Source: Octopus bimaculoides
Taxonomy: Eukaryota
DNA length: 47,153 bases
Reading direction: 5' to 3'
Assembly: GCF_001194135.2 (NCBI RefSeq)
Contig: NC_068998.1
Location: 10,904,022-10,951,174, forward strand
Notes under the pieces: generated by a model
Database searches by the model: none
What the model was told of the DNA's origin: nothing
What the model saw: the letters and a program-made list of their open reading frames with translations, nothing else
Part shown: positions 13,565 through 41,082 of the stretch, one piece after another
Layout of the letters: each line of letters begins with the position of its first letter
Position numbering within the stretch: position 1 is the first letter of the stretch
Made by a program: the position numbers and the translations under genes

Positions 13565-14857
13565 TTATTTGATGTGGCTTGTTAGATGACAGTTGAAGTC
13601 AATGCGGTCTTTGCAAATGATGTGACAAATGCCACAACGGAAAGGTTCTCCATTGTGTGAATGAAAGCCGTTGTGTAGGACATAGGTGGAACAGTCATCG
13701 AAGACAATGTGACAGTGAACACATTTGAAAACCTTGCCCTTCAAGATGAGATATGTCAGCATCGATTGATCGTCAGCATCTCTGTCTTTCTGGCTCATTA
13801 CAACTAATCCAGGGGAGGGACTCGAAGATTGTGGTGCATTGTCATAGTCACTGCCGTTAGTGCTACTACATCGGCGCATTGGATGTTTTTGTTTGCGAGT
13901 ATTGGTCGATGATGAGGTCGAAGAGGATGAGGGCATCATTCGAGAGTTGAGATTGAGACGAGTTATGGCAGATGGCAATTGCAGTCCTCCATCTTCAGGG
14001 GGTGCAATATTATCTGGAAGAAGAGCACCATCAGGAGATTTGGAACTACATATACTGGAGTTTTCTGGAGATTGGTGAGGGAGATTAGTGGCTGTTATGT
14101 CAGCATCTACCAAATTATCATAATGTGAAGTTTCATATCGAAAGATTTGATTACTGTTGGTTTCACGATTACTACTACTAATTATAGATTCTGAACTGAA
14201 ACGACGATGACGGTTTACTGTTGTAATCATGTCCACTGGTTCTTGGTTGGGAGGGATGTTTTCTTGTCCTTCCGAGATCTCTGATTTTTTAATATTTTCT
14301 GAATGTAATGAATGAGTGGAGAGATCTTCTGGATGGTCCATTGAGGGAGTGAATGATTTAGAGTTAATTGACTGGGCAATGGAGTTAATGGACTGTGGAA
14401 CAAATGCATTGAGAGATGGAGCATTGGACATTGGGGAGAGAGAGACTTTAGCTAAAGATTTACTCACATCTGGACTGTTATAAGCTAATGGTATATGACT
14501 AGAGTAATCAGGTTTACCTTCATCAGGGTCAATGATTAAGGATCCTGGTGGAGTGCTTGCCCCTGTGTGATCATAATCTCCGTTGGGCATTCCTATGTCA
14601 GTACCTTGCCCATCAGAAAGAGAATATATCAAGGCTGGATTATACTGATTGGCATGGTGGGTGGCTACGTGGTCCTGTAGTTCAGGCCAAGATCCAAATG
14701 TCATTTGACAAAGTCGGCACCGTCGATATGTCATGCTCATGTGTCGGCGTTCATGCATTTTGTAGCTTCCACATTGGGCAAAAGTACGGCCACAAATTTT
14801 GCACTGATAAGGCTTCTCACCAGTGTGTACTCTCTCGTGGGTACGTAATGTACCAAC
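13565..14857 (-). CDS. C2H2 zinc-finger transcription factor, terminal coding exon (end of ZF4, ZF5, ZF6, Ser/Pro-rich region, C-terminal finger pair)
   Basis: Acceptor ttttcttttgtAG at 14859-14858. Phase 0: VGTLRTHERVHTGEKPYQCKICGRTFAQCGSYK runs directly into the 397-aa ORF 13565..14758, which ends at TAA. AFTQ|VGTLRTHERVH completes a canonical finger across the 2575-nt intron. Confidence 0.97.
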   Translation of the reverse strand, partial: VGTLRTHERVHTGEKPYQCKICGRTFAQCGSYKMHERRHMSMTYRRCRLCQMTFGSWPELQDHVATHHANQYNPALIYSLSDGQGTDIGMPNGDYDHTGASTPPGSLIIDPDEGKPDYSSHIPLAYNSPDVSKSLAKVSLSPMSNAPSLNAFVPQSINSIAQSINSKSFTPSMDHPEDLSTHSLHSENIKKSEISEGQENIPPNQEPVDMITTVNRHRRFSSESIISSSNRETNSNQIFRYETSHYDNLVDADITATNLPHQSPENSSICSSKSPDGALLPDNIAPPEDGGLQLPSAITRLNLNSRMMPSSSSTSSSTNTRKQKHPMRRCSSTNGSDYDNAPQSSSPSPGLVVMSQKDRDADDQSMLTYLILKGKVFKCVHCHIVFDDCSTYVLHNGFHSHNGEPFRCGICHIICKDRIDFNCHLTSHIK

Positions 14858-17432: not shown

Positions 17433-17790
17433 CTGTGTAAAAGCTTTCCCACAAGTCAGACATTTGTAAGGCCTCTCACCAGTGTGTATACGTCTATGTG
17501 TGGCAAGACTGCTTTGACTAGAGAACATCTTGCCACAAATTTTACAGGTATTTGATGGCGACTCCGCTTTAATCCGGCGTGGCTGTACCAAGGACGGCAA
17601 ATTATTGATACTTTGCTTGAGCAGATGAGATTTTTCATCAGTTGCTTCGGACATCTGACGAGTATGCACCCTCTCATGCTTCTTCCAGTTGCTGGGATCA
17701 CTAAACTGCTTACCACATACAGAGCAATGGAACGGCTTCTCTCCAGTATGGATACGCTCATGAGCTTTCACATAACCAGATTGGGAAAAA
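17433..17790 (-). CDS. C2H2 zinc-finger transcription factor, internal coding exon (end of ZF1, ZF2, ZF3, start of ZF4)
   Basis: Pyrimidine-rich acceptor ttctcctccttctcaactccaaacctcAG at 17792-17791. 358 nt = 1 nt + 119 codons (FSQSGYVKAHERIHTGEKPFHCSVCGKQF...YKCLTCGKAFTQ). Donor CAG|GTATCT at 17432. TGEKP and TGERP linkers. Confidence 0.96.
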
Positions 17791-17888: not shown

Positions 17889-18635
17889 CGAGAGGGGGAG
17901 AAGAGTGTATGTATGTTGTGTGTGTATGAAAGAAAAAGAGTGTATGTGTGTCATGCTGTGTGTGTGTGTGTGTGCGTGGGAGAGAGAGAGTGTGTGAGAG
18001 TATGTCTGTTGTGTGTGTGTGTGTATGTGATGAGAGAGAGAGAGAGAGAGTGTATGTATGTTGTGTGTGTGTCTGAAAGAAAAAGAGTGAGTGTATGTGT
18101 GTCATGCTGCGTGTGTGCGTGTGTGTGAGAGAGAATGTGAGAGTATGTCCGTTGTGTGTGTGTGTGTGTGTGTATGTGGTGAGAGAGAGGGAGAGAGAGA
18201 GAGAGTGTATGTATGTTGTGTGTGTGTATGTATGTGTGCATGTGTGTGTGTCTGTGTGAGAGAGAGAGTGTGAGAGTATGTCTGTTGTGTGTATGTGTGT
18301 GTGTATGTGTGTATGTGTGTGTGTATGTGTGTGTGTGTGTTTGTGAAAGAGAAAGAGTGGGTGTATGTATCATGCTGTGTGTGTGTGTGTGTGAGTGAGA
18401 GAGAGAGAGATAGAGTGTGTAAGTATGTCTGTTGTGTGTGTGTGAGACAGAGGCACTGTGTGTCTGTGTTTGTGGAGAGAGAGAGAGAGAGAGAGAAAGT
18501 GTGTGTGTGAGTATATATTATGCGTGTGCATGAGAGAAAGAGGAAGTAAGAGAGACAGTGTGTGTCTGTGTATGTGAGGTGTGTGGGTGTGCATGTGTGT
18601 GTGTGTGGGTGTGCATGTGTGTGTGTGTGTGTATA
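17850..18635. repeat. Higher-order repeat (period about 140 bp) built from (GT)n/(GA)n blocks
   Basis: Anchor (g/a)agtatgtc(t/c)gttg recurs at about 17998, 18141, 18274 and 18421. Confidence 0.8.
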
Positions 18636-21008: not shown

Positions 21009-21223
21009 CGTTTACCACAAAATCGACAAGTGATACGAGATCCAGGGCTTCCACTACTGTTCATTAGACAACCCGGACTTCCGTTACTAGACAAAGCACC
21101 ATTTTCACAAAGGTTTGACACTGTCAGTGCACCAGGCGGTAACACACTTAAAGCACAACCATTTTCAGGTATATCATTCGTATTGGTTACACCGCTTCCT
21201 CCTCCTCCTCCTCCTCCTCCACC
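21009..21223 (-). CDS. C2H2 zinc-finger transcription factor (Ikaros/Hunchback-like), first visible coding exon; 5' part hidden in gap 21224-21672
   Basis: Minus strand is open for 71 codons plus 2 nt: G9-SGVTNTNDIPENGCALSVLPPGALTVSNLCENGALSSNGSPGCLMNSSGSPGSRITCRFCGK-cg|GTAAGC (donor at 21008). The phase-2 end joins the t at 17790 to make Arg and completes finger 1 (CRFCGKRFSQSGYVKAHERIH). Not in the ORF track. Confidence 0.92.
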
Positions 21224-22064
21224 NNNNNNNNNNNNNNNNNNNNNNNNNNNNNNNNNNNNNNNNNNNNNNNNNNNNNNNNNNNNNNNNNNNNNNNNNNNNN
21301 NNNNNNNNNNNNNNNNNNNNNNNNNNNNNNNNNNNNNNNNNNNNNNNNNNNNNNNNNNNNNNNNNNNNNNNNNNNNNNNNNNNNNNNNNNNNNNNNNNNN
21401 NNNNNNNNNNNNNNNNNNNNNNNNNNNNNNNNNNNNNNNNNNNNNNNNNNNNNNNNNNNNNNNNNNNNNNNNNNNNNNNNNNNNNNNNNNNNNNNNNNNN
21501 NNNNNNNNNNNNNNNNNNNNNNNNNNNNNNNNNNNNNNNNNNNNNNNNNNNNNNNNNNNNNNNNNNNNNNNNNNNNNNNNNNNNNNNNNNNNNNNNNNNN
21601 NNNNNNNNNNNNNNNNNNNNNNNNNNNNNNNNNNNNNNNNNNNNNNNNNNNNNNNNNNNNNNNNNNNNNNNNTATATCAAGGAAAAGGTCCTATATGTTG
21701 AAACACTTTTTTATAATATAATATACTATAGAAAGATGATATCAGAAAAGATAAATGGAAATTATATTGTGAATTTAAGATTGTAACAGGGATAAAAATT
21801 AGGTACCTACAATGTTACAAAGTGTTATTTGTTGAAAAAAACCATTTAATAAATACTTCAATCAAATTCTGGGACGAACAAAAAACAAAGAACAAAAAAA
21901 AAATTTTACTAATGTTTTTCAGCAGAGTTAGCAAAAAGTAAAAGTAGCAAAAAAAAAAAAAAAAAAAAATGTTCAGATTTCTAAAATAAGTTTGTGTGAC
22001 ACGAAGAGTATTTTTTTTTACTGGTCCTAAAAAATGTTCTTCTATACAATGGCTTGATTTCAAA

Positions 22065-40007: not shown

Positions 40008-40579
40008 GGTGATGATGATGATGATGATCAAGGAGCAAAAACAAATACCTTCTATACAGGTTTGTTTTTATTGTTTATTATCAACTTCTCCCCCCACTGC
40101 CATTTTTCTTTCCCTCCATATAAGCATGGAAGGGAATTCTTTTTTTTTTTTCTTTTTCATGTCAAAATTTTTGGGTGGGGTTGTTTTGTTGGAATAAACC
40201 CACGATAATATTGAAGAGGAGATCTCTTCAATAACGTCCACAAAGGACGCTTGAGGTTTCTCACTCTACTCGAAGCCAAACCATGGAACGAATGGCTGAA
40301 CAAAAGGAGCTGCCTGTATGTGGTACCCCAGATTGCTAGAAATAACAGGGTAAAAACAGCTTTAATTTTACACTCCTCAGTATTTAAACTGGCCAAATCC
40401 GGTCAAAATGTTATACCTGTTTTATGTTCATTTAACGTTTGCTTTCCATGCTGGCATGGGTTAGACGGTTTGACTGGAACAGATAAGCTGGGGAGCTGCA
40501 CCAGGCTCCAGTCTGATTTTGGCTTGGTTTCTACGGCTGGATGCTCTTCCTGATGCTAACCACTCCGAGAGTGTAGTGG

Positions 40580-41082
40580 GTGTCTTTTATGTGCCACTGG
40601 CATGGATGTTTTTTTGTGTCACTGGCACAGGTGCTTCTACATGCCACTGGCACAGGTGCTTCTACGTGCCTCTGGCACAGGTGTTTCTACATGTCACTGG
40701 CACAGGTGTTTCTATACATCACTGGCACAGGTGCTTTTACATGCCACTGGCACAGGTGTTTCAACGTGCCACTGGCACAAGTGCTTCTATGTGCCTCTGG
40801 CACAGGTGCTTCTAAGTGCCACTGGCACAAGTGCTTCTACATGCCACTGGCACAGGTGCTTCTACGTGTCACTGGTACAGGTGCTTCTATGTGTGATCAG
40901 TACAGGTGCGTGCCACTGACAGGTACTTCTACGTGCCACTGGCACAAGAGCTTCTACATGTCAATGGCACAGGTGCTTCTACGTGTCATCAACACAGGTG
41001 CGTGCTAGACACAGGTACTTCTACATGCCACTGGCACAGGTGCTTCTATGTCTCACTGGCACAAGTACTTCTACGTGCCAGC
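40580..41082. repeat. 25-bp minisatellite, about 19-20 copies, continuous with an RTE 3' UTR fragment (40430-40595)
   Basis: Unit (a/g)tgccactggcacaggtgcttctac; explains the four overlapping stop-free ORFs at 40519-41118. Confidence 0.95.

What the first reader, a model, noticed from the sequence alone, without database searches (positions are those of the whole stretch)
13565..13729. C-terminal Ikaros/Hunchback-type dimerisation finger pair on an atypical finger array
Seen: the protein ends FKCVHCHIVFDDCSTYVLHNGFH-SHNGEP-FRCGICHIICKDRIDFNCHLTSH. Established: Ikaros-family proteins, Hunchback and TRPS1 end in a finger pair of pattern YxCxxCxxxFxDxxxYxxHMGxH..FxCxxCxxxxxDxxxFxxH that mediates dimerisation, not DNA binding. 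The six N-terminal fingers (2 + 3 + 1, TGEKP linkers, QxG helices in ZF1, ZF4 and ZF5) are not a recognisable one-to-one match to the Ikaros or Hunchback DNA-binding fingers. Inference: a possibly uncharacterised lophotrochozoan member of this family.
Basis: partly seen in the sequence, partly recalled or inferred. Interest (0 to 1): 0.75.

Follow-up and report, generated by a model that had tools for sequence, protein, structure and literature searches.

The report
Mollusc-only Hunchback/Ikaros-like zinc-finger gene
The octopus gene really does end in the Ikaros/Hunchback-type finger pair, but it is neither Ikaros nor Hunchback: it belongs to an unstudied transcription-factor subfamily so far found only in molluscs, which makes it a modest addition to a known superfamily.

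Summary
The last 54 codons plus the stop of a three-exon minus-strand gene (13565..13729) encode two C2H2 fingers at the extreme C-terminus. The window is Octopus bimaculoides chromosome CM046618.1, and the gene is annotated 'zinc finger protein 271', 568 aa.

A profile of this pair was searched against 1.84 billion proteins:
- It first finds 16 orthologue clusters; every named one is a mollusc.
- After a score gap it finds mostly proteins with the same pair at their own C-terminus. These include vertebrate Ikaros, sea-urchin Ikaros-like, amphioxus 'Pegasus', Owenia Hunchback and bivalve Hunchback.

The six N-terminal fingers (2 + 4) have no finger-by-finger counterpart in Ikaros or Hunchback. 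Bivalves carry a true hunchback alongside this gene. Octopus also carries a second gene of the superfamily, named 'Ikaros'.

The gene is therefore a separate, apparently mollusc-restricted subfamily of the Hunchback/Ikaros-like superfamily. Its automatic names are inconsistent (Helios, Pegasus, ZNF271, spalt-like and others), and I found no paper on it.

The likely mechanism is inferred, not shown: DNA binding through ZF1-6 and self- or hetero-association through the C-terminal pair.

Novelty: new member of a known kind. Interest is modest.

The parts
21009..21064 (-). Annotated first coding exon (MNSSGSPGSRITCRFCGK + 2 nt). It carries the first half of ZF1. The reading frame stays open upstream as far as the assembly gap at 21224..21672.
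   Evidence: GT donor
17433..17790 (-). Second coding exon: the rest of ZF1, ZF2, a 37-aa spacer, ZF3 and the first half of ZF4.
   Evidence: AG acceptor and GT donor
13565..14857 (-). Last coding exon: the second half of ZF4, ZF5, ZF6, a linker of about 310 aa, the C-terminal finger pair and the stop codon.
17664..17732 (-). ZF2, FHCSVCGKQFSDPSNWKKHERVH. ZF1 (ITCRFCGKRFSQSGYVKAHERIH) is split between 21034..21009 and 17790..17748. ZF1-ZF2 are 83% identical among 10 mollusc orthologues.
17484..17552 (-). ZF3, NTCKICGKMFSSQSSLATHRRIH, the first finger of the contiguous four-finger array.
14741..14809 (-). ZF5, YQCKICGRTFAQCGSYKMHERRH. ZF4 (YKCLTCGKAFTQVGTLRTHERVH) is split between 17468..17433 and 14857..14825. 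ZF3-ZF5 are 79% identical among the orthologues.
14654..14725 (-). ZF6, RRCRLCQMTFGSWPELQDHVATHH. It is a degenerate finger with a non-TGEKP linker and is 47% identical among the orthologues.
14318..14332 (-). PEDLS pentapeptide (residues 314-318), of the PxDLS type that binds CtBP in Ikaros. It is conserved in a second cephalopod. The chiton orthologue has PYDLS and PTDLS. Most other orthologues lack it.
13871..13957 (-). Conserved linker motif LNLN-R-M-x-SSS...RKQ[KR]HPMRR[CY]SS. It is a basic patch followed by serines. A role as nuclear-localisation or phosphorylation site is inference only.
   Evidence: 54% identity against about 20% in the flanking linker
13733..13771 (-). Conserved lead-in DQSMLTYLILKGK immediately before the pair. 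It was modelled as a helix, with low to moderate confidence.
13661..13729 (-). ZF7, FKCVHCHIVFDDCSTYVLHNGFH, the first finger of the C-terminal Ikaros/Hunchback-type pair.
13574..13642 (-). ZF8, FRCGICHIICKDRIDFNCHLTSH, the second finger of the pair. The protein ends two residues later (IK, then the stop at 13565..13567).

Best explanation
This is a protein-coding gene for a nuclear C2H2 zinc-finger transcription factor of the Hunchback/Ikaros-like superfamily. That superfamily is defined by a 'dimerisation zinc finger' pair at the C-terminus.

The gene represents a distinct orthologous group present across Mollusca (chiton, bivalves, gastropods, octopus). It is separate from mollusc hunchback and from the octopus gene named 'Ikaros'.

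Proposed mechanism, which is inferred and not shown:
- The six N-terminal fingers, in two blocks (ZF1-2 and ZF3-6), read a conserved DNA target that differs from the Ikaros and Hunchback targets.
- The long, poorly conserved linker carries short regulatory motifs.
- The two C-terminal fingers do not contact DNA. They mediate self-association and possibly association with the other pair-bearing paralogues in the same genome, so the factor binds DNA as a dimer or multimer.
For: Shown directly:
- The gene model reproduces the public protein exactly.
- The gene lies in O. bimaculoides CM046618.1.
- Full-length orthologues, 41-47% identical, occur in Patella, Haliotis, Gigantopelta, Pomacea, Liolophura, Sinanodonta, Mytilus and others.
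- Conservation is concentrated in the fingers. Identity is 0.83 for ZF1-2, 0.79 for ZF3-5 and 0.75 for the C-terminal pair, against about 0.2 for the linkers.
- A second cephalopod contig keeps 52 of 54 residues of the pair, against 83% identity overall.
- The exhaustive profile search places the pair with the C-terminal pairs of named Ikaros, Hunchback and Pegasus proteins. The finger-by-finger test gives the same result.
- The group is monophyletic in 83% of neighbour-joining bootstraps.

Established in the literature: the C-terminal fingers of Ikaros and Hunchback dimerise and the N-terminal ones bind DNA. This is McCarty et al. 2003, as cited in PMC5393059 and in bioRxiv 10.1101/2024.11.11.623063.

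Inference from the canonical recognition-helix numbering (my own knowledge): the residues at the DNA-contact positions of ZF7 are D, S, T, L and those of ZF8 are D, I, D, C. They are acidic or hydrophobic, and no TGEKP linker joins the two fingers. ZF1-5 carry polar contact residues that are conserved among the orthologues, and have TGEKP or TGERP linkers.
Against: - No interaction, DNA-binding or expression data exist for this protein.
- Dimerisation is not universal in the superfamily. C. elegans HBL-1 is reported not to homodimerise through its C-terminal fingers (Giesecke et al. 2006, cited).
- The pair is only 8/22 + 8/22 identical to the vertebrate Ikaros pair. Spiralian Hunchback is 12-13/22 + 10-12/22 identical to it.
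- The AlphaFold2 monomer model of the pair is of low confidence (mean pLDDT 62.5, second finger below 50).
- No solved structure of any such pair was found by sequence search of the PDB.
Confidence: 0.65

Rival explanations
1. It is the octopus orthologue of vertebrate Ikaros (IKZF1-5), as automatic names such as 'Helios', 'Pegasus' and 'ikaros family zinc finger protein-like' on some mollusc orthologues suggest.
For: The C-terminal pair is of the Ikaros type. ZF4 (CGKAFTQVGTLRTH) weakly recalls Ikaros ZF2 (CGASFTQKGNLLRH), at 9/22 identity. A PEDLS motif is present.
Against: - Ikaros ZF3 has no counterpart in the N-terminal array.
- The N-terminal array scores 349 bits against ZNF568 but only 65 bits against Ikaros.
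- The architecture is 6 + 2, not 4 + 2.
- The Ikaros pair is closer to spiralian Hunchback than to this protein.
- The grouping A + Ikaros appears in 0 of 300 bootstraps.
- PEDLS is absent from most orthologues.
Confidence: 0.05
2. It is the octopus hunchback gene.
For: The 2 + 4 + 2 finger layout parallels the spiralian Hunchback layout of 2 + 4 + 1 + 2 seen in Potamilus and Owenia. The C-terminal pair is of the same class.
Against: - The canonical Hunchback middle fingers (KCPFVTEYKHHLEYH, CNYACVNKSMLNSH) are absent.
- Sinanodonta and Potamilus each have both a true Hunchback (P0306, P0156) and an orthologue of this gene (P0123, P0270).
- The grouping A + Hunchback appears in 0 of 300 bootstraps.
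Confidence: 0.02
3. It is a DNA-binding factor whose C-terminal pair does not dimerise. Instead the pair binds another partner (as HBL-1 finger 9 binds LIN-46), or RNA or DNA, or only stabilises the protein.
For: HBL-1 does not homodimerise, and its last finger binds LIN-46. The mollusc pair is a divergent branch of the class. It has three extra invariant cysteines, C527, C553 and C561.
Against: Homodimerisation is the reported behaviour of most tested members of the class. The pair is as conserved as the DNA-binding fingers. Its contact positions are unsuited to DNA (sequence-based inference).
Confidence: 0.25
4. It is one of the many lineage-specific, rapidly evolving octopus C2H2 poly-zinc-finger genes, and the terminal pair resembles Ikaros by chance.
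For: The top raw hits of the full-length search are vertebrate KRAB/SCAN zinc-finger proteins. Pfam sees only generic C2H2 models.
Against: - Single full-length orthologues exist in four mollusc classes, with invariant finger residues.
- The E-values of the pair to Ikaros and Hunchback pairs are about 1e-11 to 1e-13 in a library of 1.84e9 proteins.
- Those hits fall at the targets' C-termini.
Confidence: 0.02

Closest known systems
Hunchback/Ikaros-like (HIL) superfamily, defined by the C-terminal dimerisation zinc-finger pair (McCarty et al. 2003; Large & Mathies 2010, as cited in PMC3962486)
   Same: It has an N-terminal cluster of C2H2 fingers, a long linker and two atypical C2H2 fingers at the very C-terminus with the F-x-D-x3-Y-x2-H-x-G-x-H ... 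F-x-C-x2-C-x5-D-x3-F-x2-H pattern. The profile of the pair retrieves named members at their C-terminal pairs.
   Different: It forms its own clade (83% bootstrap, no supported sister group). Its DNA-binding fingers are canonical TGEKP-linked fingers unrelated to those of Ikaros or Hunchback.
Vertebrate Ikaros family (IKZF1-5)
   Same: It shares the two-domain logic and the class of C-terminal pair. The cephalopod protein has a PEDLS motif like the CtBP-binding motif of Ikaros.
   Different: It has 6 + 2 fingers, not 4 + 2 (or 3 + 2). It lacks the Ikaros ZF2-ZF3 signature. The pair is only 8/22 + 8/22 identical. PEDLS lies in the linker, not N-terminal to the DNA-binding fingers, and is not conserved across the mollusc group.
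Spiralian Hunchback (Owenia QRF78331; Potamilus KAK3611914)
   Same: The finger layout is 2 + 4 + 2 against 2 + 4 + 1 + 2, and the class of C-terminal pair is the same.
   Different: The Hunchback middle fingers are absent and the protein is about half the length. Hunchback coexists as a separate gene in the same bivalve genomes.
Mollusc paralogue group F (Sinanodonta KAL3842669; Mizuhopecten XP_021369639, 'suppressor of hairy wing-like')
   Same: The overall layout is similar. ZF1 and ZF2 are weakly collinear (11-13/22 and 8-10/22). The protein also ends just after the pair (...WHMK or WHMR against ...SHIK).
   Different: Identity is about 25-29% overall and 38% in the pair. It has six or seven contiguous N-terminal fingers. 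It coexists with the group A orthologue in Sinanodonta.
Octopus bimaculoides 'DNA-binding protein Ikaros' (XP_014780577, P0300)
   Same: It is in the same genome and has the same class of C-terminal pair, with a similar Y-x-x-x-[KQ]-G-K-[IV]-[YF]-K-C lead-in. It is a candidate heterodimer partner.
   Different: It has five unrelated N-terminal fingers. Its pair ends ...FVNQQHV and is about 38% identical. The name is automatic, and I found no Ikaros-type ZF2-ZF3 signature in it either.

Membership tests
Hunchback/Ikaros-like (dimerisation zinc-finger) superfamily | Two C2H2 fingers at the extreme C-terminus, separated from the DNA-binding fingers by a long linker | tested here: met
   ZF7 and ZF8 occupy residues 515-566 of 568, about 310 residues after ZF6.
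Hunchback/Ikaros-like (dimerisation zinc-finger) superfamily | The sequence of the pair is specifically related to the C-terminal pairs of Ikaros and Hunchback, not to generic C2H2 pairs | tested here: met
   The exhaustive HMM search gives E = 5e-12 for Ikaros P0145 at 392-443 of 452, 1.4e-11 for Owenia Hunchback at 1056-1107 of 1112, and 1.2e-11 for urchin Ikaros-like at 493-545 of 551. ZF7 best matches the penultimate finger and ZF8 the last finger in all families tested.
Hunchback/Ikaros-like (dimerisation zinc-finger) superfamily | An N-terminal cluster of DNA-binding C2H2 fingers | tested here: met
   Six fingers match Pfam zf-C2H2 (E = 1.6e-27) and have TGEKP or TGERP linkers. DNA binding itself was not tested.
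Hunchback/Ikaros-like (dimerisation zinc-finger) superfamily | The pair mediates homo- or heterodimerisation | not testable with these tools
   Only monomer prediction is available, and that model is of low confidence. No solved structure of such a pair exists in the PDB by sequence search.
Ikaros family (IKZF1-5) orthologue | The conserved DNA-binding fingers ZF2-ZF3 (FQCNQCGASFTQKGNLLRH / FKCHLCNYACRRRDALTGH) | tested here: not met
   The best matches are 9/22 (to ZF4) and none within the N-terminal array. The PDB Ikaros chain scores 65 bits against 349 bits for ZNF568.
Ikaros family (IKZF1-5) orthologue | The C-terminal pair groups with the Ikaros clade | tested here: not met
   Mean identity to the Ikaros/Pegasus cluster is 41%. 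The grouping A + Ikaros appears in 0 of 300 bootstraps. Only 50 columns were available, so deep branching is unresolved.
Hunchback orthologue | The middle fingers MF1-4 with their conserved helices (for example KCPFVTEYKHHLEYH and CNYACVNKSMLNSH) | tested here: not met
   No finger exceeds 7/22 identity to any Hunchback middle finger. A true Hunchback coexists with the orthologue of this gene in Sinanodonta and Potamilus.
Hunchback orthologue | A finger layout of N-terminal pair, four middle fingers and C-terminal pair | tested here: inconclusive
   The 2 + 4 + 2 layout here resembles the 2 + 4 + 1 + 2 layout of spiralian Hunchback. There is no sequence correspondence in the first six fingers.
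TRPS1 | A GATA-type zinc finger together with an Ikaros-like C-terminal pair | tested here: not met
   There is no GATA domain among the Pfam hits. TRPS1 itself did not appear among the named hits, so I made no direct comparison of the pair.
Lineage-specific expanded C2H2 poly-zinc-finger genes | Many tandem fingers, rapid turnover and no stable orthologues across classes | tested here: not met
   Full-length orthologues with invariant finger residues exist in Polyplacophora, Bivalvia, Gastropoda and Cephalopoda.

The most novel reading that the evidence does not exclude
Molluscs have independently built a small network of at least four paralogues bearing the dimerisation finger pair: Hunchback, the 'Ikaros'-named group, group F and this group. 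These would heterodimerise combinatorially, as vertebrate IKZF1-5 do. This group, with its 2 + 4 + 2 layout and a wholly different DNA-binding array, would then be a mollusc innovation that brings a new DNA specificity into that network.
Probability: 0.25. Interest if true: 0.5.

Novelty: new member of a known kind. Interest (0 to 1): 0.3.

Why it matters
The C-terminal dimerisation finger pair is the feature that links fly Hunchback to vertebrate Ikaros, two textbook regulators of temporal cell fate.

A well-conserved extra subfamily across molluscs, alongside a true Hunchback and at least two other pair-bearing genes, shows that the superfamily diversified independently in this phylum. Automatic names such as 'Helios', 'Pegasus' and 'ZNF271' are misleading for comparative work.

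The gene is a concrete candidate for studies of neural or blood-cell fate in cephalopods, and a natural test case for how selective these finger pairs are in choosing partners. Lineage-specific members with unrelated DNA-binding fingers are already known from C. elegans, so the finding extends a known pattern rather than breaking it.

Tried and rejected
- The word-indexed protein search with the 71-residue pair profile collected only 2 candidates and was uninformative. The exhaustive search replaced it.
- Pfam has no dedicated model for the pair. The last 74 residues give only marginal generic hits.
- PDB sequence searches with the octopus pair and with the Ikaros pair found only generic DNA-binding finger pairs such as CTCF, HIC2 and ZNF64. 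No structure of a dimerisation pair is available, so I did not run a fold search.
- The AlphaFold2 monomer model of the pair was poor: mean pLDDT 62.5, with the second finger below 50. I drew no structural argument from it.
- A Biopython bootstrap run timed out. I replaced it with my own neighbour-joining code. With 50 columns the deep branching is unresolved.
- I looked for a conserved N-terminal exon (MSDADIMAE...) in the window and did not find it. It probably lies in the assembly gap. The chromosome-level assembly has the same gap.
- Literature searches for Ikaros or hunchback with mollusc or lophotrochozoan terms found no paper on this gene.
- Rfam and tRNA scans of the window were empty.
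- I considered and rejected orthology to Ikaros, to Hunchback and to TRPS1, and membership of the expanded octopus zinc-finger families.
Full report
**1. What is at the coordinates**

The finding lies on the minus strand. ORF 13565..14758 (397 aa) ends ...LILKGKVFKCVHCHIVFDDCSTYVLHNGFHSHNGEPFRCGICHIICKDRIDFNCHLTSHIK*. The stated range 13565..13729 is exactly the 54 codons quoted plus the TAA stop.

A scan of all six frames for C-x2-4-C-x12-H-x3-5-H finds credible fingers only in this gene. The other hits lie in low-complexity TG/TA repeat translations.

**2. The gene**

A search with the exon-joined protein returned a 100% identical public protein, P0001, 'zinc finger protein 271 [Octopus bimaculoides]', 568 aa. 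It is encoded on GCA_001194135.2 chromosome CM046618.1 at 10,907,586-10,935,085.

The CDS has three exons joined by GT-AG introns: 21064..21009, 17790..17433 and 14857..13565. Together they translate exactly to P0001.

The protein has eight fingers:
- ZF1 (split by intron 1) and ZF2.
- A 37-residue spacer.
- ZF3, ZF4 (split by intron 2), ZF5 and ZF6 as one contiguous array. The ZF5-ZF6 linker is not TGEKP but has the normal length.
- About 310 residues of linker.
- ZF7 and ZF8, ending two residues before the stop.

The rest of the description is correct.

The annotated start is doubtful. The frame stays open for 72 codons, from the edge of the assembly gap (21224..21672) to the end of exon 1. 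The other mollusc orthologues begin MSDADIMAE[AS]Y..., which I did not find in the window. The chromosome-level assembly has the same gap.

**3. Orthologues**

Full-length relatives, 41-47% identical, are present in:
- Gastropods: Patella, Haliotis, Gigantopelta and Pomacea, and also Batillaria, Nucella, Littorina, Bradybaena, Elysia and Candidula.
- Bivalves: Sinanodonta, Potamilus, Mytilus, Mizuhopecten and Tegillarca.
- A chiton, Liolophura.

I built a profile of the part from ZF6 to the C-terminus, which avoids the generic fingers. It returned 44 proteins, and every named one is a mollusc.

Their database names are inconsistent: Helios, Pegasus, 'ikaros family zinc finger protein-like', ZNF271/358/596/619/865, 'spalt-major-like', 'myoneurin-like' and 'KRAB'. 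This marks a family that nobody has curated.

Mean pairwise identity among ten orthologues, by region:

| Region | Identity |
|---|---|
| ZF1-2 | 0.83 |
| ZF3-5 | 0.79 |
| ZF6 | 0.47 |
| C-terminal pair with its lead-in | 0.75 |
| Linker motif LNLN..RKQ[KR]HPMRR | 0.54 |
| Remaining linker | about 0.2 |

A contig from a second cephalopod (ENA ERZ21867824) is 83% identical over the region covered by the called protein. It keeps 52 of 54 residues of the pair.

**4. Is the pair of the Ikaros/Hunchback type?**

I searched an HMM of the pair (alignment A2, 71 columns) against every one of 1.84e9 representative proteins. It gave 989 hits at E <= 1e-3.
- The first 16 hits (113-161 bits) are the orthologue group.
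- Apart from one poly-zinc-finger protein at 91 bits, the score then falls to 70 bits or less.
- From there on the list is dominated by proteins matched at their own extreme C-terminus.

Named examples:

| Protein | E-value |
|---|---|
| Vertebrate Ikaros isoform carrying the canonical ZF2-ZF3 (P0145) | 5e-12 |
| Sea-urchin 'Ikaros-like' (P0152) | 1.2e-11 |
| Amphioxus 'Pegasus' (P0138) | 8.6e-14 |
| 'Hunchback [Owenia fusiformis]' (P0153) | 1.4e-11 |
| Bivalve protein with canonical Hunchback middle fingers (P0156) | 2.9e-11 |
| Octopus 'DNA-binding protein Ikaros' (P0141/P0300) | 6.7e-13 |

A large unnamed cluster includes a copepod protein (Tigriopus).

In a finger-by-finger comparison, ZF7 best matches the penultimate finger and ZF8 the last finger in every one of these families. 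The resemblance is therefore real and specific.

**5. Is it Ikaros or Hunchback?**

It is neither.

- ZF1-6 have no collinear best matches in vertebrate Ikaros, urchin Ikaros-like, Pegasus-like, Hunchback or the copepod group.
- Against solved structures the N-terminal array looks like a generic KRAB-type array: ZNF568 scores 349 bits and Ikaros only 65 bits.
- The vertebrate Ikaros pair is closer to spiralian Hunchback (12-13/22 and 10-12/22) than to this protein (8/22 and 8/22).
- Ikaros ZF3 finds its counterpart in Hunchback's CNYAC finger, not here.
- Sinanodonta and Potamilus each carry a true Hunchback in addition to an orthologue of this gene. Sinanodonta also carries a further paralogue, group F.
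- O. bimaculoides itself has the separate 'Ikaros'-named gene XP_014780577.

Clustering and a neighbour-joining bootstrap on the 50 alignable columns give 83% support for monophyly of the mollusc group and no supported sister group. The best grouping is with the copepod cluster, at 23%. The deep relationships stay unresolved with so few columns.

**6. How it most likely works**

Established knowledge: in Ikaros and Hunchback the N-terminal fingers bind DNA and the two C-terminal fingers mediate dimerisation. This is McCarty et al. 2003, as summarised in PMC5393059 and in bioRxiv 10.1101/2024.11.11.623063.

What the sequence shows:
- ZF1-5 have TGEKP or TGERP linkers. Their recognition-helix residues are polar and conserved among the orthologues (Q/G/Y/A, D/S/N/K, S/S/S/T, Q/G/T/T, Q/G/S/M at positions -1, 2, 3, 6).
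- ZF7 and ZF8 have D/S/T/L and D/I/D/C at those positions. The linker between them, SHNGEP, is not TGEKP-like. The reading of these positions rests on canonical Zif268 numbering, which is my own knowledge.

My inference is a sequence-specific DNA-binding factor with a target different from Ikaros and Hunchback. It would self-associate, and perhaps pair with the other paralogues, through ZF7-8.

The caveat is that HBL-1 of C. elegans is reported not to homodimerise, and its last finger binds LIN-46 instead. Dimerisation is therefore likely but not assured. I put it at about 0.6-0.65.

**7. Comparison with what is known, and novelty**

The protein meets the tested defining features of the Hunchback/Ikaros-like superfamily. 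It fails the tested features of Ikaros, Hunchback and TRPS1 orthology (no GATA finger).

Lineage-specific members with unrelated DNA-binding fingers are already known in C. elegans: ehn-3, ztf-16 and sdz-12 (PMC3962486). I found no paper on the mollusc group in the held library.

The verdict is a new, uncharacterised member (subfamily) of a known kind. The gene is already present in databases under misleading names. Interest is modest.

**8. Limits**

- I cannot exclude divergent orthologues outside molluscs. Only the best 150 of the 989 hits were inspected, and the word-indexed searches are candidate-limited.
- There are no structural, interaction, DNA-binding or expression data.

Noticed in passing
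window 21009..21223 (minus strand), gap 21224..21672: The annotated start codon (21064) is probably not the true start. The frame is open for 72 codons from the gap edge to the end of exon 1 (...GGGGGGGGGSGVTNTNDIPENGCALSVLPPGALTVSNLCENGALSSNGSPGCLM...). Other mollusc orthologues begin MSDADIMAE[AS]Y, which is not found in the window. The chromosome-level assembly has the same gap.
   Followed up: partly
window 14318..14332 (minus strand), residues 314-318: There is a PEDLS pentapeptide, identical to the CtBP-binding motif of Ikaros. A vertebrate Ikaros and a sea-urchin Ikaros-like protein also carry PEDLS, and spiralian Hunchbacks carry PLDLT. The motif is conserved in a second cephalopod. 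The chiton orthologue has PYDLS and PTDLS. Most gastropod and bivalve orthologues lack it.
   Followed up: partly
window 13871..13957 (minus strand), residues 439-467: A short linker motif, LNLN-x-R-M-x-x-SSS...RKQ[KR]HPMRR[CY]SS, is conserved across all mollusc orthologues inside an otherwise unconserved linker. It is a basic patch followed by serines. Its function is unknown.
   Followed up: no
P0300 / XP_014780577 (O. bimaculoides, elsewhere in the genome): The same species has a second gene with the Ikaros/Hunchback-type C-terminal pair and five unrelated N-terminal fingers, automatically named 'DNA-binding protein Ikaros'. I did not see the Ikaros ZF2-ZF3 signature in it either. It is a candidate heterodimer partner.
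   Followed up: partly
P0212 (Sinanodonta), P0190 (Mizuhopecten), P0168, P0176: A further mollusc paralogue group has a similar layout, with its first two fingers weakly collinear with ZF1-ZF2 and a C-terminal pair ending ...WHMK or WHMR. One member is named 'suppressor of hairy wing-like'.
   Followed up: partly
L003 5001..6207 (ENA ERZ21867824 contig ctg101873l): In a related cephalopod assembly the called protein leaves the frame after ...NTRKQK and loses the finger pair. The pair is intact in another frame (ORF 5893..6207). This looks like a one-base assembly error or a real frameshift near the RKQKHPMRR motif.
   Followed up: partly
window, whole: The window is AT-rich (35% G+C) and has ten assembly gaps. 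It is full of microsatellites, including a (GT)n tract of about 400 bp at 17940..18345 just upstream of exon 2, and a 25-bp minisatellite of about 21 copies at 40579..41080. I saw no other credible gene, no tRNA and no Rfam match.
   Followed up: partly
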